Below are positions 10,426 to 63,086 of a stretch of 64,000 nt of DNA, one piece after another. Each line of letters opens with the position of its first letter. Positions within the stretch are counted from its first letter, which is position 1. The position numbers and the translations under genes were made by a program. Under the pieces are notes generated by a model that had not been told where the DNA came from, made no database searches, and worked only from the letters and a program-made list of their open reading frames with translations. The DNA lies in IMG/VR virus record IMGVR_UViG_3300034072_000926, positions 401,260-465,259 of that record; one strand, 5' to 3'.

Positions 10426-10794
10426 TTATTGCTTCAAATCAACAGGAGTTATTTCCTTTGGAGCATCCGGACGAGTCTCGCCGATGCTCTTCAGCTTTTC
10501 GTCCTGTTCTTTCTGTAGTTCTGCCTCTCGTTGCGCAGCATTCATGTCCATCAGGTCATTGCATTCGCCCCTCGTGAACACGCCATCGGCTTTAGATTTC
10601 AGAATGAAGATCCTGAAATTGGGATGGGTTTCATAGAAGGACTCGAACAGACTGTAGCAGGAATCTGAGGCACGTTCGTTGTCACGATGGTGGTTCATGT
10701 AATAGGGAAAGCCTACCCCAAAACCCACTATCACTGCACAACATGAAGCGAACAGTAAAGCTGATGATCGATTAGACAATCTCTTCCTCCTCAA
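10426..10794 (-). CDS. membrane-anchored hypothetical protein
   Basis: N-terminal hydrophobic segment LLFASCCAVIVGFGVGFPYY. Confidence 0.6.
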   Translation of the reverse strand: MRRKRLSNRSSALLFASCCAVIVGFGVGFPYYMNHHRDNERASDSCYSLFESFYETHPNFRIFILKSKADGVFTRGECNDLMDMNAAQREAELQKEQDEKLKSIGETRPDAPKEITPVDLKQ

Positions 10795-12409
10795 TCAACA
10801 CGCCTGCTCGAATCCTCAAAATGTTGATGCAGTTCTCAAGACCATACGCCTCAATGAATGCACCGAACCGAGGACCATCACTGGATCCCAACAGGCACTC
10901 GTATAGCGCCTGGAACCAAGAACGCAAAGGTTCAAATCCATGTGCCTTGCCAACCTCATATACCTGATACTGGTAATGATCAGCCGTCATGTTGGGCAGC
11001 ATTGCCTCAAGGCGAGTAGCAAGGTCGATGAACGCATCAGCTTCCTGAACCGTTGGTTCCCGACATTCACGATCATACAGACCACGCTCAGTCGCGTAGC
11101 GGATGACCTTGTTGGCCTTGATGAGAACCTGCAACCGCTGCTGGAAGTCAAGTGGTCGAGACTGTTCGAGGTAGCTGACCAGCGTTTCAGCGTCCGAAGC
11201 CTGGCTGACCACGCTCAAGTTGAGCAATAGGCTATACGCCACATCGACGATCGGTTCGGCGATCCCATTCTCAGTGAAGAACCACGCAGCATCGTTCGGA
11301 GTGAGCGGTCGCCCAAGCATCTTCAGATAGTCGTCTTCCATCTTGGGAACAAGATCGATATGAATCGGCTTAGATGCAGTCGGCTTCTGGAACAGGAAGA
11401 GCATGAGCGATTCCTTAGAGCCATAGGACAACCAGTCCTCAATCGAAAAGCCATTGCCCTTCGACTTGCTGATCTTCTTGCCCTCTGCGTCGAGGAAGAG
11501 TTCATAGGTCATGCCAACTGGAGGTGTCCCGCCGATTGCACGACAGATCTTCCGAGAAGCCGTAACCGAATCAATGAGATCCTTGCCGGACATTTCGTAG
11601 TCCACATCAAAGTGAGCCCAGCGCATTGCCCAGTCCACCTTCCACTGAAGCTTGGAGCGACCATTACCCGTTGGGCTCGTCACCGCCGTGACATCATCCC
11701 TTCCGGTTTCCCACGTGAGCTGGCGCCCGGGGATCACCATTTCGCGCGAGACACCCTCATTGAGGAGTCGTCCCTCAAAAAGCGGCATGAATGGACTGTA
11801 GGTTGCGCGGCGCTCCTCACCCAGTGTGGGCAGCATCACGCCCTGAATGGCATCGTAATTGTCCCAGATGCGATCCAGCATTTCGTTGAACTTGCCCGAC
11901 CGGTAATAGTCAGAGGAGCTCACGAAGGATACGCGACTCCGATCCGGCGAGCTGCCGACCACCGAGCCATCGTAGGTCTTGAGAATGTCGTCAACAAACC
12001 GCACCAGACGATCGTTGTTAGCGCCCGCAAAGCTGCCTGCATACTGGTCGGCATCGTTGGCCACGCACTCGTCCATTTCCGGATAAGGATTTGGAACCGT
12101 GCTCAGCGGCTTGCCCAGATAATCCTGCATCCACGCGGGCATCCCATCAGGAACCTTCCGCATCGCGTCGTAGTCGTCGCTGAACATGATAAGTCGAGTC
12201 TGATACGCCTTGTCAGTCAGCGTATCAAATGCCTTCATAACCCAAAGGGTGCGAACAACTTCTGCGAACGTGCCGATATGCGGCGCACCCGAGGGACCAT
12301 AGCCGGTCTCGAACGTCACGACATCACCAGGCTTCTTCCCCTTCTTCTCAATATGCTTGAGAAGTGAACGGGCCTCTTGGAAGGGCCAGCTCTTTGCCTG
12401 AGTAGTCAC
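10772..12409 (-). CDS. lysS: lysine--tRNA ligase, class I
   Basis: ETGYGPSGAPHIGT (HIGH), KLQWKVDWAMRW, YEMSGKD, KISKSKGN (KMSKS), GPRFG; GTG start after AGGAGG. Confidence 0.95.
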   Translation of the reverse strand: MTTQAKSWPFQEARSLLKHIEKKGKKPGDVVTFETGYGPSGAPHIGTFAEVVRTLWVMKAFDTLTDKAYQTRLIMFSDDYDAMRKVPDGMPAWMQDYLGKPLSTVPNPYPEMDECVANDADQYAGSFAGANNDRLVRFVDDILKTYDGSVVGSSPDRSRVSFVSSSDYYRSGKFNEMLDRIWDNYDAIQGVMLPTLGEERRATYSPFMPLFEGRLLNEGVSREMVIPGRQLTWETGRDDVTAVTSPTGNGRSKLQWKVDWAMRWAHFDVDYEMSGKDLIDSVTASRKICRAIGGTPPVGMTYELFLDAEGKKISKSKGNGFSIEDWLSYGSKESLMLFLFQKPTASKPIHIDLVPKMEDDYLKMLGRPLTPNDAAWFFTENGIAEPIVDVAYSLLLNLSVVSQASDAETLVSYLEQSRPLDFQQRLQVLIKANKVIRYATERGLYDRECREPTVQEADAFIDLATRLEAMLPNMTADHYQYQVYEVGKAHGFEPLRSWFQALYECLLGSSDGPRFGAFIEAYGLENCINILRIRAGVLIEEEEIV

Positions 12410-12481
12410 GTATGCCTCCTTGAATACTATCAAGCTGCAACGTATAGACAATCACACAGGTGTCAACCTATTTAGGAGGAC

Positions 12482-47865: not shown

Positions 47866-49143
47866 TCAGTCCAACTCGCTCAGAAGGAATTTGTTCTCGA
47901 GATAGGGACGAAGCACCTCAGGGATACGTATCTCTCCGCCGTCCTGATAGTTCTCGAGCACCGCCACAAGTGTTCGACCAACAGCTAGACCACTACCGTT
48001 GAGGGTATGTGCGAAGACCGTGTGGCCATCAACCTTGTAGCGGGTATTCATGCGACGTGCTTGGAAATCGCCGCAGTTAGAGACGCTGCTGATCTCTCGA
48101 TACGCTTGCTGACCCGGAAGCCAGACCTCAATATCATAGGTCTTCTGTGCGCTGAAACCCATATCGCCCTTACAGAGCAACATCGTGCGATAAGGAAGAT
48201 CAAGACGAGCAAGGATCTGTTCAGCAGCATTCAGCATATAGTCATGCTCGCTGACACTTTGTTCGGGCTTGCAAATCGAAACCAATTCAACTTTCTGGAA
48301 CTGGTGTTGACGAATCAGCCCACGAGTATCACGACCTGCCGAGCCTGCCTCACTACGGAAGCAATCAGTCAATGCCACATAGCGATGCATCCCTAGCAGG
48401 ATTTCATCAGCATGGATATTGGTCAGGCTGACCTCGGCAGTGGGAATGAGATATTGTTCGGTTGCAAAGGCATCTTCGCTATTGGCAATTCCGAAGAGAT
48501 CATCTTTGAACTTGGGAAGCTGCCCAGTGCCGAATAGTGCTTCCTTGTTGACGATCACTGGAGGGATGACCTCGAGGAAGCCCCGCTCACGATGACTATC
48601 AAGCATGAACTGACCGAGGGCACGATGGAGACGAGCGACTGGACCCATCAACATGCTGAAGCGGGATCCGCTGATCTTCGCAGCACGGTCCATACCGAAT
48701 TGCAGGTCAAGTTCGTAATGAGGAACGGAGTTCTTGGGAAGGATGACGCCCCATTTGCGAACTTCTACATTGCTTGATTCGTTCGAGCCATCGGGAACAT
48801 CATCAGCCGCGATATTGGGACACTGTAGGAGATAGCCGTTGAGAACAAACTCACTGCTATTGGCCTGGTGCTCATATAGCTTGATATCGTCCTTCAGTTT
48901 CGCGATAATCGCTTTTAGCTCATCGACTTTCTCAAGGTCATTAGACTTCATAGCCAGACCAATATCCCCGCTGAGCTTTTTCAGAGCGGACTGCGCCTGC
49001 TGTTGCTTGGAAAGGAAGCCTCGACGATTCTCGTCATATTCGAGAATCTTATCCGTTTTTGGATCATGGCCTCGACTCTTCATAGCGTCAGTGAAGGCCT
49101 GTGGATTGTCCCTGATGGACTTGATATCGAAGTGATAATTCAT
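47866..49143 (-). CDS. serS: serine--tRNA ligase
   Basis: N-terminal coiled coil, LIPTAEV, FRSEAGSAGRDTRGLIRQHQFQKVE, EISSVSNC, TLNGSGLAVGRT. Confidence 0.96.
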   Translation of the reverse strand: MNYHFDIKSIRDNPQAFTDAMKSRGHDPKTDKILEYDENRRGFLSKQQQAQSALKKLSGDIGLAMKSNDLEKVDELKAIIAKLKDDIKLYEHQANSSEFVLNGYLLQCPNIAADDVPDGSNESSNVEVRKWGVILPKNSVPHYELDLQFGMDRAAKISGSRFSMLMGPVARLHRALGQFMLDSHRERGFLEVIPPVIVNKEALFGTGQLPKFKDDLFGIANSEDAFATEQYLIPTAEVSLTNIHADEILLGMHRYVALTDCFRSEAGSAGRDTRGLIRQHQFQKVELVSICKPEQSVSEHDYMLNAAEQILARLDLPYRTMLLCKGDMGFSAQKTYDIEVWLPGQQAYREISSVSNCGDFQARRMNTRYKVDGHTVFAHTLNGSGLAVGRTLVAVLENYQDGGEIRIPEVLRPYLENKFLLSELD

Positions 49144-49240
49144 ACCGCTTCGTAACATTGGTTACACTAGGCGTCAAGACTAGATTGGGTAGTCATGGTG
49201 AAACCCAGTTCGTTTCCGAACCGGGCCTCATGTATTTAGA

Positions 49241-55585: not shown

Positions 55586-55630
55586 AAAATACCCGCAGTC
55601 ATTACTAACTGCGGGTATTTATTAAAGCGG

Positions 55631-55705
55631 CAGCGAGGGATGGGCTCGAACCACCGCCGACGATCTCTTCACAAGATCGCGCTCTACCAACTGAGCTACC
55701 CCGCT
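55631..55705 (-). tRNA. tRNA with 9-nt anticodon loop (TT-GTG-AAGA, His-like anticodon)
   Basis: AGCGGGG/CCTCGCT acceptor, GCTC/GAGC D-stem, CGATC/GATCG stem, GGTGG-TTCGAGC-CCATC; G73; no CCA. Confidence 0.65.
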
Positions 55706-55849
55706 ATGGTTGGGATGGAAGTTCTTCAAGTTTGGACAATTGCTTGTCCGCACAGGCATTTTACTTCCATCCCTCAGTGTGCGTCGCTGTAAGCTTGCAC
55801 ATCAGACCTTATTACTACAAGACTCTGATACAAGCGTCAACAACTATTT

Positions 55850-56551
55850 TCAGTCTTTCTTCACGCCCACAAAGCGGAGCAGGAAGAGGAAGAGATTGAG
55901 GAAGTCGAGGTAGAGGTTCAGCGCACCCATGACCACGATTCGACCCTTCGTATCACTGTCCATACGCGGGCTATAGGCTTCCTTGAGAGTCTGCGTATCC
56001 CAGGCAGTCAAGCCGGCGAAGATCAGGATACCCGCGATGCCGATGAACAAGTTCAGTCCAGTGCTGGGCATGAAAATGTTCAGGATCATGAGGCCCAGAA
56101 GACCGAACAAGCTGAAGATCAGGAAGCCACCGATTGGACCGAGGTCACGCTTGGTCGTGTAACCGTAGAGGCTACAGCCCGCAAAACCGATAGCAGCACC
56201 GAGGAATGCGAACAGAATCGAACCACCGGTATATTTGCTCAGGATCAGACCGAGACCCAGACCTTCGAGGATCACGAACGACCAGTAAAGGCCATGCAGC
56301 GTGGACAGTTTCATGCGCTCGACACCGAGGCTCATCGCGAACACCAAGGCTAGCGGCGACAGTGCGACGATCCAGAAAAGCAGACCGCCCTGCTTGAGAG
56401 TCTCGACCATACCGCTGATCTGTGCGAACCATGCAGCGCCGGCGCTGACGAGAAGACCCATGAGCATCAGATTGTAGATGCTCGTCATATAGTTGCGAAG
56501 GCCTTGGTCAACGGCCTCGCGTTCTGCAATATACATTCGTGAAACCTCCAT
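55850..56551 (-). CDS. Bax inhibitor-1/YccA family membrane protein
   Basis: multiple TM helices; YGYTTKRDL, AWDTQTLK, GALNLYLDFLNLFLFLLR. Confidence 0.92.
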   Translation of the reverse strand: MEVSRMYIAEREAVDQGLRNYMTSIYNLMLMGLLVSAGAAWFAQISGMVETLKQGGLLFWIVALSPLALVFAMSLGVERMKLSTLHGLYWSFVILEGLGLGLILSKYTGGSILFAFLGAAIGFAGCSLYGYTTKRDLGPIGGFLIFSLFGLLGLMILNIFMPSTGLNLFIGIAGILIFAGLTAWDTQTLKEAYSPRMDSDTKGRIVVMGALNLYLDFLNLFLFLLRFVGVKKD

Positions 56552-56598
56552 TTAGACTCACTCATACCACTATACAGGGTGGTAGGAAGGATGTCAAC

Positions 56599-56817
56599 CT
56601 ACTTGAACTTACCCTTCGGCCGAACGATGGTTGCGTTCTTGATATCAAGCGATGAGAAGAAGCCGTTCCGCTTCGAGAGTTCCTCGCGAGTGACTTTGCC
56701 CGACTTTAAGTCAGCTTCGTCTTTATCCCTCGCTGCCTGTTTCTCCGCCGCCCTCGCTTTCGGGTCGAATGTTCCTACGGATATAGGCTTTTTGGTTGAG
56801 GATTTCTTCTGGTTCAC
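56599..56817 (-). CDS. hypothetical basic protein
   Basis: 72-aa ORF, AAGGA SD. Confidence 0.55.
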   Translation of the reverse strand: MNQKKSSTKKPISVGTFDPKARAAEKQAARDKDEADLKSGKVTREELSKRNGFFSSLDIKNATIVRPKGKFK

Positions 56818-56971
56818 GGGGATGATCCTTTAGTCGCTCGATTATGGCTTGGAAGATCATTGGCTTCATGGAACCGAATGGCGCATTGATTCCACTCAGC
56901 TCTTCAAGTTGGTTCTCACAGAACCGAATGATCTCAATATCGGTTAGTGGATATTGGGCTAGATTTCGCAT
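56723..56971 (-). CDS. hypothetical protein
   Basis: 82-aa ORF overlapping the next by 95 nt. Confidence 0.45.
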   Translation of the reverse strand: MRNLAQYPLTDIEIIRFCENQLEELSGINAPFGSMKPMIFQAIIERLKDHPREPEEILNQKAYIRRNIRPESEGGGETGSEG

Positions 56972-57031
56972 ATCAGTGTCCTGAAAGTAATAAGACCATT
57001 ACGGTCAATAAGAAAGCCGCGACACCTTGTT

Positions 57032-57412
57032 TCATATCATCTTTTCCATAATAACATAGGTGCTGATAATCATAGCAAGATAACGCCAGTTGTTCCAACG
57101 CAAGGATTGCTTGATATAATACCAGTCCCTTAGTGAATCCTGACACCTCTGCGAATGATCTCGATAATCACCGTTGTGACGAATCACGTATTTCCCATTT
57201 TGGTAGCTGATACCCTGGAAGCCACTTCTCATATGCCTTCGTTCATTCTCTCGATGTGCTGCCGTTTCATCAGCATCAAAGGCAAGATTGGCGAAGATAC
57301 GAGTAGCATAATAGACAATGACCATCAGACAGATAAAGGTCTGGAGGTCTCTACCGTGCATACCCTGAAGGTATCCGAGGAATAGAGCGGCGGGGAGGAG
57401 AAGAAAGATCAT
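57032..57412 (-). CDS. membrane protein
   Basis: hydrophobic N- and C-terminal segments. Confidence 0.6.
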   Translation of the reverse strand: MIFLLLPAALFLGYLQGMHGRDLQTFICLMVIVYYATRIFANLAFDADETAAHRENERRHMRSGFQGISYQNGKYVIRHNGDYRDHSQRCQDSLRDWYYIKQSLRWNNWRYLAMIISTYVIMEKMI

Positions 57413-57654
57413 TTGATTTGAATTGCCGCTTGTCTACATTCTTGGAGGGAATCAATAGAAGCCCGTCCATAAGAGTTCTTCATAATCGTATCAACACATT
57501 GGAGATAGAAATCCCTTGTGGATTTCTTATCAGCAATTAGCCTATCCGAATTGGTTGGCATATCGCATGAACCTAGGACGACTAGACATAAAAGAAGACC
57601 GAAACGAGCAGAAGTCATAAAGTGACTATACTGTCGTTTCGGTCTGAAAATCAA
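57409..57654 (-). CDS. putative lipoprotein
   Basis: LLLCLVVLGSC lipobox-like sequence. Confidence 0.55.
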   Translation of the reverse strand: MIFRPKRQYSHFMTSARFGLLLCLVVLGSCDMPTNSDRLIADKKSTRDFYLQCVDTIMKNSYGRASIDSLQECRQAAIQIK

Positions 57655-57658
57655 TTTG

Positions 57659-57737
57659 TCCTAGATGTAGGAATCGAACCTACTCGTCTTTCGAAACCCG
57701 TTATGAGCGGGCAGGCTCCCCATTCGCCTTATCTAGG
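57659..57737 (-). tRNA. tRNA with CAU anticodon and long variable arm
   Basis: CCTAGAT/ATCTAGG, GCCCG-CT CAT AA-CGGGT, 12-nt variable region, GTAGG-TTCGATT-CCTAC; A8; no CCA. Confidence 0.7.
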
Positions 57738-57742
57738 ATGTT

Positions 57743-57879
57743 GTGACGGGCAAGTAATCGCTAATGGAATTTAGCCGGCTGCTCTAACCACCTGAGCTAC
57801 ACCGGGCCCTAAGACCCGATGAAGGGAGTCGAACCCTCGACACGCTGGTTGGGATAACCCATCAACTACGGCCCGTCAC
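57743..57879 (-). ncRNA. Y RNA-like element enclosing a circularly permuted tRNA (AT-CCC-AA loop, U73)
   Basis: GTGACGGGCCG..GGGTTATC / T-arm / acceptor closed by TTAG / D-arm / CTTGCCCGTCAC. Confidence 0.8.
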
Positions 57880-57937
57880 GTGTTCTTGATATGGTAAAAG
57901 GGCACTGTTGTCAAGCGCCCTTTTACCATAATGATTA

Positions 57938-58120
57938 TTAAATGTGGACGCCTGAGAGCAGTCCCGATTTCTGCAATAGAACCAGTAGGGCGATTACACC
58001 CACGACCAGTTTTGCTGGCATGTGGACAGGGGCCGGGAATGCCGAGTCAATGACCCAGAATGCACACCACACGATGGCCACAAAGATAACCAGCATTAGT
58101 AGAAGTGAAATGATATCCAT
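57938..58120 (-). CDS. small two-TM membrane protein
   Basis: 60 aa, two hydrophobic helices, AAGGAG SD. Confidence 0.7.
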   Translation of the reverse strand: MDIISLLLMLVIFVAIVWCAFWVIDSAFPAPVHMPAKLVVGVIALLVLLQKSGLLSGVHI

Positions 58121-58189
58121 GTCTTTTCTCCTTTTTCTGGATACTAATACTTACTAGGATAGGAGCGTGGTTAAACACATGGATCAAAA

Positions 58190-58218
58190 TGGTGCGCGCA
58201 GTGGGGGTCGAACCCACG
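58190..58218 (-). pseudogene. isolated tRNA 3' fragment (T-arm + acceptor strand + CCA)
   Basis: GTGGG-TTCGACC-CCCAC-TGCGCGC-A-CCA without a 5' half. Confidence 0.6.
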
Positions 58219-58224
58219 CTTGAG

Positions 58225-58298
58225 TGTCCCCAGTCGGATTCGAACCGACAACATGCGGGGTTTAAGGCCGCCGACTCTACCAGTTGGCCTATAGGGAC
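58225..58298 (-). tRNA. tRNA-Leu(UAA) with short variable loop
   Basis: GTCCCTA/TGGGGAC, CT-TAA-AC loop, GTCGG-TTCGAAT-CCGAC. Confidence 0.75.
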
Positions 58299-58307
58299 AT
58301 AAGTATT

Positions 58308-58392
58308 TGGTAGGCACGGTGGGACTCGAACCCACACGGATTAACCACACAATTTTAAGTCGTGCGCGTATGACCAATTTCGCCACGTGCCC
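58308..58392 (-). tRNA. tRNA-Leu(UAA)
   Basis: GGGCACG/CGTGCCT, GCG/CGC D-stem, CT-TAA-AA, extended variable region, A73, CCA. Confidence 0.88.
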
Positions 58393-58402
58393 ATGGAGAA
58401 GT

Positions 58403-58978
58403 ATGTCTAAGAACGAAGTGATAAAACAATTCGGCTACACATGTTCAGCTTGTAGCATATCTGAATGGATGGGTAAACCTATTTGTTTAGAGCTTGATCA
58501 CATCGATGGCAATAATCGAAACAATGAATTGTCGAATCTGCGTCTACTCTGTCCCAATTGTCACTCTCAGACAGAGACATTCAGAGGTCGCAATATCAAT
58601 AAAGGTGAGACTAAAGTTTCAGATGAGGATCTAGTCGAGGCTCTGACTTCGACGAAAAACATTCGTCAAGCCCTCATCAAGGTCGGTCTAACACCAAAGG
58701 GTATGAACTATCAGCGAGCTTCAAAACTTCTTAATCATCAATACCAAACGGTAGATAAGAATAATTCGCAATATGGATCAGTTTGGATCCATAATGGAAC
58801 TTCAAATAAGAAGATCAAAGCTGACTTACTTTCAGAATATCTCGAGCAAGGGTGGGTCAAAGGCAGGATCATGCTAACGAAAGCCCCATCACAACGCGGC
58901 AAGTTTTGGGTAACGAACGGTCTTCAAAACCGAATGGTTACTGAGATTCCTGAAGGATGGTGGAAAGGTATGTGTTAA
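58403..58978 (+). CDS. HNH homing endonuclease
   Basis: CSAC..LELDHIDGNNRNNELSNLRLLCPNCHS; inserted antisense next to tRNA-Leu. Confidence 0.9.
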   Translation: MSKNEVIKQFGYTCSACSISEWMGKPICLELDHIDGNNRNNELSNLRLLCPNCHSQTETFRGRNINKGETKVSDEDLVEALTSTKNIRQALIKVGLTPKGMNYQRASKLLNHQYQTVDKNNSQYGSVWIHNGTSNKKIKADLLSEYLEQGWVKGRIMLTKAPSQRGKFWVTNGLQNRMVTEIPEGWWKGMC

Positions 58979-58993
58979 GTCTCTACCTTTGGG

Positions 58994-59425
58994 CTATGCG
59001 CGCTTAACGTCCTCAACGGCTCGACGGAGAATGTCTTCCATCAGCGTATTGAACGTAATATCCCTCTTATGTGCTTCCTTGAATAGAAATAGAAGCAATT
59101 CGTCATCCAGATCGAGAGGTATCTGAACACGGAGATCGAAGGTCTTATTAGCCACGATGGCTTCGGCCTTCTCGACAAAGTCCTCAAGCACGTCAAGCTC
59201 AACAAACTCGATGCTCGTATCTAGCTGATCAGCTACGGCATCCTTATGATCTGGATCAATCCAACGATAAGCGAAGCTACCATGCTCATAATCGGGACGG
59301 GTCACAACAGTTAGGACACGAGTGCCATGACCCTGAACTACTCCGGCGGTCATTCTCGCAGTATCCTGATTCAGACCCTTGCTGGCCTGATCCACATACC
59401 AGTTATAGATTTCTGCTTCGTTCAT
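58994..59425 (-). CDS. hypothetical protein
   Basis: 143-aa ORF, RHH-like C-terminus, TAG stop. Confidence 0.65.
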   Translation of the reverse strand: MNEAEIYNWYVDQASKGLNQDTARMTAGVVQGHGTRVLTVVTRPDYEHGSFAYRWIDPDHKDAVADQLDTSIEFVELDVLEDFVEKAEAIVANKTFDLRVQIPLDLDDELLLFLFKEAHKRDITFNTLMEDILRRAVEDVKRA

Positions 59426-59446
59426 CTTGTTACCTCTTTATCTCAC

Positions 59447-60355
59447 CTACTTATTAGCAGGGTTAAGGTCAGAGGACAATCTTTCTTTCGCAAACTCGAT
59501 ATAATGTTCATCAACATCAAAGCCGAGCCAATCAAGACCTTCGGCTTGAGCCGCCACAGCACTGGTTCCTGTTCCCATAAAGGGGTCGAGGAGGGTTCCC
59601 TCGACGTTGCTGAACCTAATACAGCGACGAACCAATTCAACGGGGAAGGTTGCCGGATGAGAGCCCCTATGAGTCCCTCGACTAGCAATCGTTTCATACG
59701 GTATAAACCACACATTGCCGGGGCAATGTCGGTCGTCTACGGGCTTGGCTGATGCTAATTTGAGGGCTAGAGCGTCCTCGAGTGCAACCTTTTGCTCTTC
59801 GGTCGCATTCGCGTCATAGTCTCGCTTATCCTTCCATCCGGCTTTCTTGATCATACGACCACGCCAGCGGCCACTCTTGTCCAAGTTTGCTTTATCTGCA
59901 TATGGAACACCGACTGCCGATTTATTACAAGGGACATTGCCTGACTTTGTGAAGTGGAAGAGATGTTCCCATGTGGGATTTGCGAAACGCTCGCTATTGA
60001 TGGGCTTGTAATGACCCAATTGTTGATCATCGATTGCGATGCTTTTGGTCCAAATGAAATTGTTCTGTAGGACCATATGCTTGCGAGCTTCGTTGGCTAC
60101 ATCCATACCAACCCAGGGATCCACATTACTGTAGCCCATATTAAGCCAGAAATGTCCATCGGGTTTGAGCACTCGTTTCACTTCTGCGAAAACGCAAGAA
60201 AGCCACGTGAGATAATCCTCACGTGGCGTTGTATCTTGATATGTGGAATACTTGATTCCAAGATTATATGGAGGGCTAGTGACGCAGATATCTAGGGATT
60301 CTGCATCCAACTCTTTCAAACCCTCGAGGCAATCCTTCAGTTCTATTCTTCCCAT
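59447..60355 (-). CDS. beta-class amino DNA methyltransferase (N4-C/N6-A)
   Basis: VTSPPY, HPATFP, LLDPFMGTGTS. Confidence 0.92.
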   Translation of the reverse strand: MGRIELKDCLEGLKELDAESLDICVTSPPYNLGIKYSTYQDTTPREDYLTWLSCVFAEVKRVLKPDGHFWLNMGYSNVDPWVGMDVANEARKHMVLQNNFIWTKSIAIDDQQLGHYKPINSERFANPTWEHLFHFTKSGNVPCNKSAVGVPYADKANLDKSGRWRGRMIKKAGWKDKRDYDANATEEQKVALEDALALKLASAKPVDDRHCPGNVWFIPYETIASRGTHRGSHPATFPVELVRRCIRFSNVEGTLLDPFMGTGTSAVAAQAEGLDWLGFDVDEHYIEFAKERLSSDLNPANK

Positions 60356-60386
60356 ACATCTAATTAGCGATGTAGGAAAGTGAACT

Positions 60387-60557
60387 TTAGCCCAGGGTAG
60401 CGAGCTCCTCAGGGGTCAGCCGGCTCTTGATCTCTTCCACGGCTGCATTGATGCGAACCAGTTCGGGATGATCAGGCTGTTCCAGGCAGTCCAACCTCAA
60501 GCCATTCAGGCGAAGCTGGGCGTTGCGTAGGTGCTGAAGATTCGTTGCGTTGTTCAT
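60387..60557 (-). CDS. small hypothetical protein, 56 aa
   Basis: MNNATNLQHLRNAQLRL...; AGGAG SD; TTGCAA promoter; not in ORF track. Confidence 0.65.
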   Translation of the reverse strand: MNNATNLQHLRNAQLRLNGLRLDCLEQPDHPELVRINAAVEEIKSRLTPEELATLG

Positions 60558-60661
60558 GTATTCTCCTGTTGCTGGTCACGCATCAGTAGAACACAATTGC
60601 ATCCTTTGCAACCTAAAAATGTAACCGATTTAGTGACATGATTGGTTAGGAGCCTATAAGT

Positions 60662-60862
60662 ATGCAGAAACGCAACATACCCGAGGTGGGTTACATGTTC
60701 ATCCTACAATCACTTCTAGTTCTATATCTGACCGCAGCCATAGCAATGAGCGCAGCGCTCTGCAGGCATTATCCACAATTTATGGGATGGGCTAACGTGA
60801 GTCGCGGAATGGCTTGGCCAGTCACGATCTACGAAATCGTCTCAGGATTGATCGACGAATAA
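60662..60862 (+). CDS. small membrane protein
   Basis: hydrophobic segment; WPV motif. Confidence 0.5.
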   Translation: MQKRNIPEVGYMFILQSLLVLYLTAAIAMSAALCRHYPQFMGWANVSRGMAWPVTIYEIVSGLIDE

Positions 60863-60863
60863 G

Positions 60864-60953
60864 CGGGAAGCAGTGGAATTGAACCACTCACCTGTAGGGG
60901 TTATAGGTGCTCATAGCTTGAAGCCAGACTAGGACCATCCTAGCTTACTTCCC
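60864..60953 (-). tRNA. tRNA-Sec-like / allo-tRNA-like RNA, anticodon UCA
   Basis: GGGAAGT(A)/(T)GCTTCCC, 6-bp D-stem GCTAGG/CCTAGT with 5-nt loop, CT-TCA-AG, long variable arm CACCT/AGGTG, G73; anticodon stem weak. Confidence 0.7.
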
Positions 60954-61154
60954 AGGTTGCAAGCGATCATAGAACGTCCTCAAGAGATCGTTCGACATCT
61001 TTGCATAATAAGAACGCGGATAGTTGGTTGCAATGTGGTTGAGCTGATTACTCAGCATCTTTGCATCATCGGCTGAGATTTGACGATCATTGATCCAATC
61101 GCTTCCGTTGTGGTTGCGAAGCCAATAATTCTTATTCAATTCCCAAAGACGCAT
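60945..61154 (-). CDS. small protein starting MRLWEL after a TAAATA motif
   Basis: GGAGG SD; its stop codon overlaps the 5' end of the UCA tRNA. Confidence 0.6.
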   Translation of the reverse strand: MRLWELNKNYWLRNHNGSDWINDRQISADDAKMLSNQLNHIATNYPRSYYAKMSNDLLRTFYDRLQPGK

Positions 61155-61177
61155 AATATCCTCCACGTTCAGGATAT

Positions 61178-61453
61178 TTAGCGTTCTGGGCGATGCTCAA
61201 CTGTCCAACCAGGAAGCTCTCTTTGTAGCCTCTTGTGAAGGTTTGCGCCTTGTTTGTTGAATCCCTTGAGATCAAAGGGACGTTTGCGGTCCTCGACGTC
61301 TAGGTAGAATTCACTCTGTTCATACCAAAGCGTCCACTTATAGATATCATCGAAGAGTCGCTGACTGATGGGGAGTTCCTCGAGGTCCATCATGCTACCG
61401 TCTTTACTCCAAACACCACTGCTGGAATAATCGGCCATCAACTTAACGAACAT
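61178..61453 (-). CDS. hypothetical protein
   Basis: start MFVKLMADY after AAGGAG; the upstream ORF-track extension runs through an RNA gene. Confidence 0.65.
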   Translation of the reverse strand: MFVKLMADYSSSGVWSKDGSMMDLEELPISQRLFDDIYKWTLWYEQSEFYLDVEDRKRPFDLKGFNKQGANLHKRLQRELPGWTVEHRPER

Positions 61454-61462
61454 TGGAACTCC

Positions 61463-61706
61463 TTTTGAGGGCAAGTTTTGTGCTGGCCTTTCTTCCGCTG
61501 CGTCTGCCAATTCCGCCACCTCGCCCATCAACTGCCTTGGATACAACAGCAATTATGATCTTGCGTATCCATTCTTGTCTTACTGTCCTAGGCGGATTTT
61601 AGCCGGAGACCTAGTCCAAGACAGATGGTGGGGAGGGAAGGACTCGAACCTTCATGACTTTAGTCCACGGTCTTACATCGATAACCCAGAACTTCGGCCC
61701 TCAAAA
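61463..61706 (-). ncRNA. Y RNA-like element enclosing a permuted tRNA-Tyr-like domain (GTA, long variable arm, A73-CCA)
   Basis: TTTTGAGGGCCGAAG..GGGTTATC, 3' half ending CCTCCCC-A-CCA, ~95-nt linker, 5' half GGCGAGG-TG-GCG..CGC, CTTGCCCTCAAAA. Confidence 0.78.
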
Positions 61707-61715
61707 CGATCTAAA

Positions 61716-61858
61716 AGTTCGACGGGCAAGTGTTGCGAAGGACCTTTTTCAGCGTCCTATCCACTAGACGATCCCCGCACAATGGAGCGGGGACTGGGAT
61801 TCGAACCCAGGTTTCCGGCTTGACATGCGATAACCCTTTGCTATCGGCCCGTCGAACT
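61716..61858 (-). ncRNA. Y RNA-like element enclosing a permuted tRNA (AT-GTC-AA loop, Gly-like acceptor, CCA)
   Basis: AGTTCGACGGGCCGA..GGGTTATC, T-arm CTGGG/CCCAG, TCCCCGC-T-CCA-TTGT-GCGGGGA, D-arm, CTTGCCCGTCGAACT. Confidence 0.82.
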
Positions 61859-61894
61859 AATGACTTTATACACTGGCATCTAACCAGTGTCAAG

Positions 61895-61963
61895 TGCTCT
61901 AGGAGGGATTCGAACCCACAAGAGTCGCTTTAGGAGAGCAACGTCCGTCCAGTCGGCTAGAGC
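61895..61963 (-). tRNA. tRNA-Arg(CCU)-like with shortened D region
   Basis: GCTCTAG/CTAGAGC, TTGCT-CT CCT AA-AGCGA; only 15 nt between acceptor and anticodon stems. Confidence 0.6.
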
Positions 61964-61974
61964 ATAAGTAGAAT

Positions 61975-62283
61975 ATGTTTAGATATCTTCAACCCGGTGA
62001 AAAGGGCGACTATTGGGGAACCTCAAGTCTCCTTGAATGGCTTACAAAGCTTCTAAAAGGTCATGTTGTTCCGGAAGATGCAACTGTTCAGCACATTGAA
62101 TTCTTTCTTCAAGAATATTATGCCAATGCACAGAAAACAGGCCCATATGCTATAATCACTTTCTATCCTTCATCTATCCGATATTTGGGTCCTGAAGGAG
62201 TAGACGGGACTACCTTTGATGCTCATCGAATCAATATCAATTACGATACTAATCGAGTTATTCAAAGTATTAGCTTAGGGTAA
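61975..62283 (+). CDS. hypothetical protein
   Basis: AT-rich 102-aa ORF antisense within the tRNA island; C-terminus resembles small protease-inhibitor motifs (RININYD..VIQSISLG). Confidence 0.6.
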   Translation: MFRYLQPGEKGDYWGTSSLLEWLTKLLKGHVVPEDATVQHIEFFLQEYYANAQKTGPYAIITFYPSSIRYLGPEGVDGTTFDAHRININYDTNRVIQSISLG

Positions 62284-62284
62284 G

Positions 62285-62356
62285 TGGTCCTACCAAGATT
62301 CGAACTTGGGCTTACGCTTTCGTAGAGCGTCGTGATATCCATTTCACTATAGGACC
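62285..62356 (-). tRNA. tRNA-Arg(ACG)
   Basis: GGTCCTA/TAGGACC, GTGA/TCAC D-stem, ACGCT-CT ACG AA-AGCGT. Confidence 0.88.
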
Positions 62357-62361
62357 ATGGG

Positions 62362-62466
62362 TGACGAGCAAGTGGAGGATTCCGTGCGCTCCCAATTGAG
62401 CTAACCGTTGTTCGTGAACAACGATTGGAGTCGAACCAATGATAACGGAAGCCAATCGGCTCGTCA
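62362..62466 (-). ncRNA. YrlA-type Y RNA (T-arm, closed acceptor-like stem, D-arm, no anticodon)
   Basis: TGACGAGCCGA..CGTTATC-ATTGG-TTCGACT-CCAAT-CGTTGTT-CACG-AACAACG..GCTC/GAGC..CTTGCTCGTCA; compensatory change in the terminal stem. Confidence 0.82.
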
Positions 62467-62472
62467 TTTGTT

Positions 62473-62633
62473 TGAACCCCGAGGCCAGTTTCCGCACCTG
62501 GCTCCTTTCATCTCCGTCCATCTTCTCAAGATGGTGAGCTCGCCCAACAAACTTCAAAGATACTCGATTGGGGCGAAGGCCATCGATTGCCTAGCCTGAT
62601 CCGCTCTTTTTCTGAGAAGCTTCAAGGGGTTCA
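62473..62633 (-). ncRNA. candidate structured RNA within the tRNA island
   Basis: closed by TGAACCCC/GGGGTTCA; internal hairpins CCATCTT/AAGATGG, GCCAG/CTGGC, CGCCC/GGGCG. Confidence 0.45.
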
Positions 62634-62634
62634 G

Positions 62635-62705
62635 TGCTCTGAGAGAGAATCGAACTCTCGTTGGCGGGTTACGAATCCGCTATCTTACCACTAAATGACC
62701 AGAGC
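62635..62705 (-). tRNA. tRNA-Thr(CGU)
   Basis: GCTCTGG/TCAGAGC, TT-CGT-AA loop, GAGAG-TTCGATT-CTCTC. Confidence 0.78.
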
Positions 62706-62710
62706 GTGGT

Positions 62711-62784
62711 TGGTGCCGGCTAAGGGAATCGAACCCTTGATTGATGCTTACAAGGCAACTGTTATACCATTTAACTAAGCCGGC
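62711..62784 (-). tRNA. tRNA-Thr(UGU)
   Basis: GCCGGCT/AGCCGGC, GTTA/TAAC, CT-TGT-AA, A73-CCA. Confidence 0.88.
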
Positions 62785-62789
62785 ATTTT

Positions 62790-62923
62790 CCATAGTTTGT
62801 GATCAGACCAGTGACCGCCACGGTTGAGCGTCTGTCTAGCGTCCTTCGTGTAAAAACTCTAGATACTACTGCCTAAGCGGGTAGCCTAATCCGCCCAGAT
62901 TACTCCGAACGAACCAACTATGG
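62790..62923 (-). ncRNA. candidate structured RNA
   Basis: 8-bp terminal inverted repeat CCATAGTT/AACTATGG; ORF-free; lies between tRNAs. Confidence 0.35.
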
Positions 62924-63017
62924 AAGAAACAAAGAGCCTCGCAGCGCATTACTTCTGTAAACTCTTTGTTTCCGATCTGGACTCTACAGCAGTACATCCG
63001 TGCTGTCAAGTCCATAG

Positions 63018-63086
63018 AGGCCCTGTCGAGACTCGAACTCGACATCAGACGTTCGAAGCGTCCGGGCTAGATCCACTAGCAGGGCC
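63018..63086 (-). tRNA. tRNA-Arg(UCG)-like with shortened D region
   Basis: GGCCCTG/CAGGGCC, GGACG-CT TCG AA-CGTCT, TCGAG/CTCGA; 16 nt between acceptor and anticodon stems. Confidence 0.6.

What the first reader, a model, noticed from the sequence alone, without database searches (positions are those of the whole stretch)
60864..60953. Sec-like/allo-tRNA with UCA anticodon overlapping a CDS stop
Seen: 6-bp D-stem with short loop, long variable arm, G73, UCA anticodon, 7/5 or 8/4 acceptor/T arrangement. Its first nine nucleotides are the last codons (GGG AAG TAA) of the upstream ORF. No selA/selB/selD in the window. Established: SerRS recognises long variable arms largely independently of the anticodon, and 8/4 allo-tRNAs resemble tRNA-Sec. 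Inference: a UGA-to-Ser suppressor served by the phage SerRS. The weak anticodon stem could instead mean decay.
Basis: partly seen in the sequence, partly recalled or inferred. Interest (0 to 1): 0.7.

Follow-up and report, generated by a model that had tools for sequence, protein, structure and literature searches.

The report
Serine-type odd tRNA in megaphage
A giant phage carries a real, transcribed, serine-type tRNA of unusual shape whose anticodon happens to read the stop codon UGA, but sister phages have a crippled 6-base loop there and the phage uses UGA as a normal stop, so it is not a code-changing device.

Summary
The cloverleaf is real. It lies on the minus strand (60953→60864) in the tRNA cluster of a 465-kb phage. 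It has a 7-nt loop CUUCAAG (anticodon UCA), a 21-nt variable arm and G73, and its first 9 nt are the last codons of a conserved ORF. Default ARAGORN and Rfam thresholds miss it, and they also miss or under-score a clear tRNA-Ser(GCU) homolog that has the same acceptor, D and T arms and folds 8/4. So it belongs to the phage (8/4) tRNA-Ser / allo-tRNA lineage, and serine identity is plausible. The phage does encode a SerRS.

The tRNA body is strongly conserved: 9% divergence against 42% at flanking third codon positions, with no pair broken. RNA contigs from two metatranscriptomes end at its predicted 3' end. The anticodon loop is not conserved. Two sister lineages have 6-nt loops (CUCUAG, CUCUUG), so UCA is a derived state caused by a 1-nt insertion.

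TGA ends about 37% of the phage's genes, and I found no in-frame TGA, SelA/B/D or RF gene.

Verdict: this is a functional serine-type tRNA-like RNA. In this lineage it may be a weak or incidental opal suppressor, but it is not a recoding system, a tRNA-Sec or a decaying pseudogene.

The parts
60864..60953 (-). Class-II (long variable arm) tRNA-like gene, 90 nt, with G73 at 60864 and no encoded CCA
   Evidence: Sequence; cloverleaf MFE z = -3.2; Rfam tRNA-Sec 36.2 bits; homologs in L002/G001, L024 and L016; identical in 5 further assemblies
60917..60923 (-). 7-nt anticodon loop CUUCAAG, with anticodon UCA at 60921-60919
   Evidence: Sister lineages have 6-nt loops CUCUAG and CUCUUG, so this loop is derived by a 1-nt insertion plus one substitution
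60911..60928 (-). Anticodon arm: 5 pairs with bulged U41 (60913) and one G.U pair
   Evidence: Rfam alignment. In G001 the G.U becomes A-U and the bulged base changes U to C. All pairs are kept
60888..60910 (-). Long variable arm (5-bp stem plus loop)
   Evidence: A46-U64 here corresponds to G-C in G001, which is a compensatory double change
60945..61166 (-). Conserved small ORF (69-73 aa). Its last codons GGG AAG TAA are tRNA nt 1-9
   Evidence: It is 77% (G001) and 85% (L024) identical at protein level. Third codon positions differ 31/74, against 16/74 and 8/74 at first and second positions, as expected for a coding sequence under purifying selection
60662..60862 (+). Convergent 66-aa hydrophobic ORF whose stop lies 1 nt from the tRNA 3' end
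   Evidence: It is conserved in G001 and called as a gene in other assemblies
47866..49158 (-). Phage seryl-tRNA synthetase (430 aa; Seryl_tRNA_N plus class II core)

Best explanation
This is a genuine, expressed class-II tRNA gene of the phage (8/4) tRNA-Ser / allo-tRNA lineage.

Shown:
- It is co-transcribed with the upstream small ORFs.
- An RNA end lies at its predicted 3' terminus.
- Its acceptor, D, T and variable arms and G73 are held by purifying selection. These are the parts that RNase P/Z, EF-Tu and SerRS read.
- Its anticodon loop is not held by selection.

Inferred:
- It is serylated, by the phage SerRS or by the host enzyme, because SerRS ignores the anticodon.
- The function conserved across the family does not need a canonical anticodon loop. 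Two sister lineages have only a 6-nt loop.
- In this phage lineage, a 1-nt insertion re-created a regular 7-nt loop that reads UCA. This allele can therefore in principle deliver Ser at UGA.
- The genome shows no dependence on that, so I rate it a weak or incidental opal suppressor and not a recoding device.
For: Family:
- L016 carries a homolog with an identical acceptor stem, an identical T arm, a near-identical D arm, G73 plus encoded CCA, a normal anticodon arm with GCU, and an 8/4 fold.
- Mukai et al. (PMC5389517) report (8/4) tRNA-Ser in bacteriophages, and allo-tRNAs with long D stems and diverse non-Ser anticodons.

Constraint:
- 8 of 90 positions differ from G001, against 42% at third codon positions of the flanking ORF.
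- All 27 pairs are kept in both sequences. There is one compensatory pair in the variable stem and one G.U to A-U change.
- True orthologous tRNAs of the two phages are 66-97% identical. This element is 91% identical.

Expression and processing:
- RNA-library contig X11 covers 60863-61026 with no mismatch and ends at the tRNA 3' end. Contig X6 60690-60864 starts there.
- The same pattern appears at the neighbouring tRNA-Arg genes: ends at 61893/61894 and at 62357.

Loop turnover:
- The loops are CUUCAAG here, CUCUUG in L024 and CUCUAG in G001.
- ORF73 identities of 85% and 77% place L024 nearer to this phage, so the 6-nt state is the parsimonious ancestor.
- Both alleles are confirmed in independent assemblies.

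No need for UGA decoding. SerRS is present.
Against: - Nothing here shows aminoacylation, or a mature 90-nt species with CCA added.
- The RNA evidence is a few unstranded Logan contigs from metatranscriptomes, which can contain DNA.
- Only three lineages are known, and one of them is partial, so the polarity of the loop change rests on parsimony.
- The UCA allele is fixed in every strain of this lineage seen: 5 further assemblies plus 3 DNA runs.
- The loop has canonical U33 and A37.
- The phage keeps two well-formed tRNA(CUA) genes that are conserved in the sister phage.
- The last three points all fit a real suppressor role better than an incidental one.
Confidence: 0.45

Rival explanations
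1. Dedicated UGA-to-Ser nonsense suppressor. The tRNA is serylated by the phage SerRS and competes with RF2 at UGA, producing programmed read-through of phage or host genes.
For: - A 7-nt loop with U33, UCA and A37.
- Ser-type body and a phage SerRS.
- The allele is fixed in all strains seen.
- This lineage shows extra changes in the element, including a compensatory variable-stem pair.
- Conserved tRNA(CUA) genes show that the clade keeps suppressor-type tRNAs.
- Irregular allo-tRNAs can be translationally active in E. coli (PMC5389517).
Against: - Sister lineages have 6-nt loops, so the family's conserved function predates UCA and does not need it.
- TGA ends about 246 of 668 roughly called genes, usually in ATGA overlaps.
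- No in-frame TGA has coding signal on both sides.
- Stops that align to a sense codon in the sister genome: TGA about 8/245, TAA about 17/377, TAG 2/45. None of the TGA cases aligns to Ser.
- There is no RF gene.
- The anticodon stem has a bulge and a G.U pair, and C32-G38 could pair and shrink the loop.
Confidence: 0.3
2. A purely structural RNA-processing module. The tRNA shape is kept only as an RNase P/Z cleavage and 3'-end-forming or stabilising signal for the ORF124-ORF73 transcript, in an 82-nt gap between convergent genes. It is neither charged nor used for decoding.
For: - RNA contig ends fall at the 3' terminus.
- No terminator-like site lies between the convergent ORFs.
- The anticodon loop is free to vary.
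- Other tRNAs of the cluster sit 1-11 nt after ORF stops.
Against: The long variable arm is not needed for RNase P/Z, yet it is kept as a helix through a compensatory double change. G73 and the Ser-type acceptor are invariant across all homologs, including the true tRNA-Ser.
Confidence: 0.12
3. A decaying tRNA-Ser/Tyr pseudogene with no function, retained only because it overlaps an ORF stop.
For: - Sub-threshold for ARAGORN and Rfam.
- Bulged anticodon stem.
- 6-nt loops in relatives.
- No encoded CCA.
Against: - 100% of pairs are kept in two phages whose flanks differ at 42% of third codon positions.
- Only 9 nt overlap the ORF, so the overlap cannot explain conservation of the other 81 nt.
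- It is present in RNA libraries.
- A clearly intact homolog (L016) is also missed by ARAGORN and scores only 40 bits, so the low tool scores reflect the architecture and not decay.
Confidence: 0.1
4. A selenocysteine tRNA (selC) that uses host SelA/SelB.
For: UCA, G73, long D stem, long variable arm. The best Rfam family is tRNA-Sec.
Against: - The score is below the gathering threshold (36.2 against 47).
- The acceptor/T branch is 12 bp, not the bacterial 13 bp (8/5).
- The long D stem is shared by this phage's tRNA-Tyr and tRNA-Ser.
- There is no SelA, SelB or SelD in the genome.
- There is no in-frame TGA.
- The homolog is a tRNA-Ser(GCU).
Confidence: 0.03

Closest known systems
allo-tRNAs and (8/4) tRNA-Ser of bacteria and phages (Mukai et al. 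2017, NAR 45:2776, PMC5389517)
   Same: - tRNA-Sec-like look: long D stem with a short loop, long variable arm, G73.
- A 12-bp acceptor/T branch that can fold 8/4.
- A serine-type body carrying a non-serine anticodon.
- Location in a cluster of irregular tRNAs.
- Found by a Sec-type model and missed by standard finders.
- Some members overlap ORFs or are thought not to decode.
   Different: - Here 7/5 and 8/4 are both possible. Only the L016 homolog is forced into 8/4.
- The anticodon stem has a bulge.
- Close relatives have 6-nt loops.
- It sits in a 465-kb phage beside a phage SerRS.
- The 5' end supplies the stop codon of a conserved ORF.
Suppressor tRNAs of stop-codon-recoded phages (Borges et al., bioRxiv 10.1101/2021.08.26.457843; Peters et al. 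2022, PMC9523058)
   Same: A phage-encoded tRNA with a stop-codon anticodon, sometimes accompanied by a phage aaRS.
   Different: - Recoded phages show in-frame stops in late genes and depletion of the recoded stop as a terminator. One close relative uses TGA at 2.7% of stops.
- Only TGA to Trp and TAG to Gln reassignments were seen in those phages.
- Here TGA is about 37% of stops, there are no in-frame TGAs, and the tRNA is serine-type.
Bacterial tRNA-Sec (selC, Rfam RF01852)
   Same: UCA, G73, extended D stem, long variable arm.
   Different: A 12-bp and not a 13-bp acceptor/T branch, a sub-threshold score, no Sel machinery and no SECIS context.
Phage tRNA-Tyr(GUA) paralog of the same genome (genome 6064-6144) and of other phage contigs (L015, L017, L018)
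   Same: Identical nt 1-9 and identical 3' acceptor strand, with similar D and T arms.
   Different: Those have A73 plus encoded CCA, a GUA anticodon and a short variable arm. The element has G73 and a much longer variable arm, and it matches the tRNA-Ser(GCU) homolog better.

Membership tests
allo-tRNA / (8/4) tRNA-Ser (Mukai 2017) | 12-bp acceptor/T branch in an 8/4 (or 9/3) arrangement | tested here: inconclusive
   A8-U82 (8/4) and A66-U82 (7/5) are mutually exclusive alternatives. The homolog L016 has U in place of A66 and folds 8/4 in both the MFE and the centroid structure.
allo-tRNA / (8/4) tRNA-Ser (Mukai 2017) | Serine identity set: long variable arm and G73 | tested here: met
   A 21-nt arm with a 5-bp stem kept by a compensatory change. 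G73 is invariant in all homologs.
allo-tRNA / (8/4) tRNA-Ser (Mukai 2017) | Sec-like D arm (long stem, short loop) | tested here: met
   6 bp with a 3-nt loop, or 5 bp with a 5-nt loop. This phage's tRNA-Tyr and tRNA-Ser show the same trait.
allo-tRNA / (8/4) tRNA-Ser (Mukai 2017) | Serylation and activity on the ribosome | not testable with these tools
   Needs an aminoacylation assay and a reporter assay.
tRNA-Sec (selC) | Rfam RF01852 gathering score | tested here: not met
   36.2 bits against 47.
tRNA-Sec (selC) | 13-bp acceptor/T branch (8/5 in bacteria) | tested here: not met
   At most 12 bp.
tRNA-Sec (selC) | Sel machinery and in-frame UGA targets | tested here: not met
   No SelA, SelB-wing or SelD in the 465-kb genome. 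No in-frame TGA with coding signal on both sides. Host genes could not be examined.
Suppressor tRNA of a recoded phage | In-frame use of the suppressed stop, and its depletion as a terminator | tested here: not met
   TGA is 246 of 668 stops, 102 of 133 closely spaced TGA junctions are in the ATGA-overlap frame, there are 0 in-frame TGAs, and there is no excess against the sister genome.
Canonical bacterial-type tRNA | Detection by ARAGORN at default settings or by Rfam RF00005 at gathering score; 7-nt loop with U33 and a purine at 37 | tested here: inconclusive
   Not detected at default thresholds. The loop itself is canonical in this phage but is 6 nt in the sister lineages.
tRNA pseudogene | Broken stems, a near-neutral substitution rate, no expression | tested here: not met
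   100% of pairs kept. 9% divergence against 42% at flanking third codon positions. RNA contigs cover it.

The most novel reading that the evidence does not exclude
In this megaphage clade, tRNA bodies are kept while their anticodon arms turn over. In this lineage a serine-type tRNA-like RNA that had a non-decoding 6-nt loop has just been converted, by a 1-nt insertion, into a working Ser-inserting opal suppressor served by the phage's own SerRS. That would be a natural UGA-to-Ser suppressor caught at birth in a phage that still uses the standard code, and a possible first step toward a reassignment not yet reported in phages.
Probability: 0.25. Interest if true: 0.75.

Novelty: new variant of a known kind. 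Interest (0 to 1): 0.5.

Why it matters
- Standard tRNA finders miss a whole structural class of phage tRNAs. Both this element and its tRNA-Ser(GCU) homolog are missed.
- This is a natural case where the parts of a tRNA read by SerRS and the processing enzymes are conserved while the anticodon loop changes in length and sequence between sister phages.
- That bears on how suppressor tRNAs and code changes originate, and on whether allo-tRNA-like RNAs decode at all.
- The three natural alleles (7-nt UCA, 6-nt CUCUAG, 6-nt CUCUUG), the GCU homolog and the phage SerRS together form a ready-made experimental series.

Tried and rejected
- ARAGORN at default settings and Rfam at gathering thresholds gave no call.
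- megablast and blastn of the element and its surroundings against 50,697 cultured-phage records found nothing useful.
- Four pattern scans of IMG/VR contigs found only one relative, G001.
- The first metagenome pattern scan was empty.
- The genome-contig scan gave one chance match in a Marinomonas contig that has no tRNA.
- A protein search with the convergent 66-aa ORF found only the ORF itself. The search with the 124-aa ORF found only itself and the already-known L024 contig.
- Whole-genome recoding was tested and rejected:
  - the largest ORFs are open in code 11;
  - apparent long TGA- or TAG-containing frames are off-frame artefacts or neighbouring genes joined together.
- Assembly error as the cause of the 6-nt or 7-nt loops was rejected. 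Both alleles recur in independent assemblies.
- The promoter/terminator scan near the element was no better than shuffled sequence.
- Complex prediction was not used, because it gives no verdict for RNA partners.
- A paper search for tRNAs with 6-nt anticodon loops found nothing relevant. My statement that such loops are not expected to decode normally rests on my own knowledge.

Full report
WHAT IS THERE

The finding lies on the minus strand, from window 60953 (nt 1) to 60864 (nt 90). The sequence folds on its own into a cloverleaf (MFE -33.9 kcal/mol, z = -3.2, 0 of 200 shuffles as good).

Read together with the Rfam tRNA-Sec alignment, the anatomy is:
- Acceptor GGGAAGU/GCUUCCC, with an optional 8th pair A8-U82.
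- A D stem of 5-6 bp with a 3-5-nt loop.
- An anticodon stem of five pairs, with one G.U pair and a bulged U41.
- A regular 7-nt loop CUUCAAG (U33, UCA, A37).
- A 21-nt variable arm with a 5-bp stem.
- T arm GUGG-UUCAAUU-CCAC.
- Discriminator G73, with no encoded CCA.

Nt 1-9 are the last two codons and the TAA stop of the ORF at 60945-61166(-).

Standard tools do not call the element. ARAGORN at default settings and Rfam at gathering thresholds miss it. The best Rfam family is tRNA-Sec at 36.2 bits against a gathering score of 47. ARAGORN reports a misregistered 'tRNA-SeC' only at a 90% threshold.

CONTEXT

The window is the last 64 kb of a 465,259-bp virus record rated complete.
- ARAGORN finds 58 tRNAs in the genome. 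Most are in one minus-strand cluster that runs across the record ends, and the element sits inside it.
- A full-length SerRS (N-terminal arm domain plus class II core) is at window 47866-49158(-). A class I LysRS is at 10772-12451(-).
- SelA, SelB, SelD and release-factor domains are absent from the whole genome.
- The element fills the 82-nt gap between ORF73 and a convergent 66-aa plus-strand ORF whose stop is 1 nt from G73.
- Other tRNAs of this phage follow ORF stops by 1-11 nt. This is the only real overlap.

RELATIVES AND FAMILY

Four kinds of relative were found.

1. A 462-kb sister phage, G001 (locus L002), has the element in the same place, with the same ORF ending in PGK-stop.
2. A 721-bp ENA contig (L024) holds the first 45 nt. 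Its ORF73 is 85% identical, against 77% for G001.
3. A 4.2-kb metagenome contig with a phage-like tRNA cluster (L016) holds a clear homolog. It has:
   - an identical acceptor stem and T arm, and a near-identical D arm;
   - G73 followed by an encoded CCA;
   - a normal 5-bp anticodon stem with loop UUGCUAA, so it is a tRNA-Ser(GCU);
   - a fold with an 8-bp acceptor and a 4-bp T stem, because the base before the T stem is U.
   ARAGORN misses this one too, and it scores only 40.0 bits on the tRNA-Sec model. The low scores of the finding therefore reflect the architecture and not decay.
4. Within the genome, the nearest paralog is tRNA-Tyr(GUA) at genome 6064-6144. It has the same first 9 nt and the same 3' acceptor strand, but A73 and an encoded CCA.

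The phage's other class-II tRNAs (Tyr, Ser) also have long D stems with short loops. That trait is a house style of this phage and not a selenocysteine hallmark.

Mukai et al. (PMC5389517) describe exactly this class. They report (8/4) tRNA-Ser in bacteriophages. They also report allo-tRNAs with Sec-like D arms, serine identity and highly diverse anticodons. Some of those are active in E. coli, and others are probably not used in translation.

CONSERVATION

Between this phage and G001 the element differs at 8 of 90 positions. The flanking ORF73 differs at 25% of nucleotides and at 42% of third codon positions. Orthologous true tRNAs of the two phages are 66-97% identical, so at 91% this element is conserved as well as they are.

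None of the 8 differences breaks a pair:
- A46-U64 against G-C is a compensatory double change in the variable stem.
- G29.U39 against A-U keeps the anticodon stem.
[quoted passage not shown] - CUUCAAG (7 nt) in this phage.
- CUCUUG (6 nt) in L024.
- CUCUAG (6 nt) in G001.

Both the 7-nt and the G001 6-nt alleles recur in independent assemblies, so neither is an assembly error. The 7-nt form is identical in five further assemblies and shows no difference in three DNA runs. The G001 form recurs in a Logan assembly.

L024 is nearer to this phage than G001 is. The 6-nt loop is therefore the parsimonious ancestral state, and UCA arose by a 1-nt insertion plus one substitution. This step is inference from three lineages.

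EXPRESSION

Four wastewater metatranscriptome runs hold pieces of this region.
- One contig (X11, 164 nt, no mismatch) runs from 61026 through the whole element to 60863.
- Another (X6) covers 60690-60864.
- So two runs show an end within 1 nt of the predicted discriminator.
- The same behaviour is seen at true neighbours. Contigs end or start at 61893/61894, next to A73 of tRNA-Arg(CCU). One ends at 62357, the base before the 5' end of tRNA-Arg(ACG).

This suggests that the element is co-transcribed with ORF73 and cut at its 3' end like a tRNA. Three caveats apply. These are unstranded Logan contigs of low depth. RNA libraries can contain DNA. A mature 90-nt species would not be captured.

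DOES THE PHAGE NEED UGA DECODING?

The evidence says no.
- The largest ORFs (up to 3517 aa) are open in the standard code.
- A rough gene call gives 668 genes at 84% coding density, with stops TAA 377, TGA 246 and TAG 45.
- TGA stops are mostly in ATGA overlaps. Only 8% are followed in frame by the next gene.
- No in-frame TGA or TAG has coding potential on both sides.
- I fetched the whole sister genome and aligned 60 codons on each side of every stop. A stop in this phage met a sense codon in the sister genome, with homology on both sides, for about 8 of 245 TGA, 17 of 377 TAA and 2 of 45 TAG stops. None of the TGA cases aligned to Ser.

So the lineage that carries the UCA allele has not begun to accumulate readable TGAs. 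Recoded phages, by contrast, first lose the stop that will be recoded, and only TGA to Trp or TAG to Gln has been seen (bioRxiv 10.1101/2021.08.26.457843).

INTERPRETATION

Best reading (0.45): a functional serine-type tRNA-like RNA.
- Its body is kept for processing and, by inference, for serylation. SerRS does not read the anticodon, and the variable-arm helix, which only SerRS needs, is maintained by compensation.
- Its anticodon loop is not under selection across the family.
- In this lineage the loop has become canonical and reads UCA. Ser insertion at UGA is therefore possible, but it is probably weak or incidental.

Rivals:
- A dedicated opal suppressor (0.30). In favour: the canonical loop, its fixation in all strains, and the clade's conserved tRNA(CUA) genes. 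Against: the 6-nt sister alleles and the genome's ordinary use of TGA.
- A pure processing or 3'-end module (0.12). The conserved variable arm and G73 argue against it.
- A decaying pseudogene (0.10). Constraint and expression argue against it.
- A tRNA-Sec (0.03). It fails the score, the 13-bp rule and the machinery test.

NOVELTY

This is a new variant of the published allo-tRNA / phage (8/4) tRNA-Ser kind. What is new:
- The three natural anticodon-loop alleles on one conserved body.
- The megaphage setting, with its own SerRS.
- The overlap with an ORF stop.
- The RNA-end evidence.

It is of moderate interest as it stands. It would be of high interest if the UCA allele proved to be a working Ser suppressor.

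Noticed in passing
window 61717-61857 (-) and 61463-61706 (-): There appear to be two circularly PERMUTED tRNA genes. In each, the 3' half (T arm, acceptor 3' strand, discriminator, CCA) lies upstream of the matching 5' half (acceptor 5' strand, D arm). The whole is closed by a 10-11-bp inverted repeat.

After un-permuting in silico, ARAGORN at default settings calls tRNA-Leu(AAG) with a 49-nt 'intron' and a class-II tRNA-Tyr(GUA) with a 59-nt 'intron'. In the native order nothing is called.

The block is 88% conserved in the sister phage. There are compensatory changes in the permuted acceptor helix (G5-C to A5-U, A7-U to G7.U), while the spacer and the discriminator vary.

The phage has an Rnl2-type RNA ligase (genome 154631-155116) but no RtcB and no tRNA-intron endonuclease. 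A text search found no paper on permuted tRNA genes in phages. This may be more novel than the assigned finding.
   Followed up: partly
window 40312-40388 (-); also genome 222209-222282 (outside the window): Two well-formed tRNA genes with a CUA (amber) anticodon, one scoring 62 bits on the Rfam tRNA model. Both are conserved in the sister phage at 88% and 95% identity. Yet the phage uses the standard code, TAG ends only about 7% of genes, and no in-frame TAG was found.
   Followed up: partly
genome 5752-5823 (outside the window) against sister phage 185829-185902: These are orthologous tRNAs with identical acceptor, D and T arms but unrelated anticodon arms, CCA (Trp) here and CUA (amber) in the sister phage. 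It is a second case of anticodon-arm turnover on a conserved tRNA body.
   Followed up: partly
genome 5839-5911 (outside the window): A tRNA that ARAGORN labels '?(cc)'. Its anticodon loop is irregular, either 6 nt or 8 nt depending on the closing pair. It lies next to tRNA-Trp, and no ortholog was found in the sister phage.
   Followed up: partly
window 61893-61894 and 62357: Metatranscriptome contig ends coincide with the 3' end of tRNA-Arg(CCU) and with the base before the 5' end of tRNA-Arg(ACG). This suggests RNase Z-type and RNase P-type cuts in the cluster transcript.
   Followed up: no
window 10772-12451 (-): A phage-encoded class I lysyl-tRNA synthetase (PF01921, 296 bits), in addition to the SerRS. 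Two further class II core matches lie elsewhere in the genome.
   Followed up: no
window 60662-60862 (+): A small hydrophobic 66-aa ORF lying antisense within a minus-strand gene run. It is conserved in the sister phage, and an RNA contig covers it. Its function is unknown.
   Followed up: no
window 55629-63086 together with genome 447-10309: The tRNA cluster continues across the two ends of the record, so the record is a linearised circular or circularly permuted genome.
   Followed up: no
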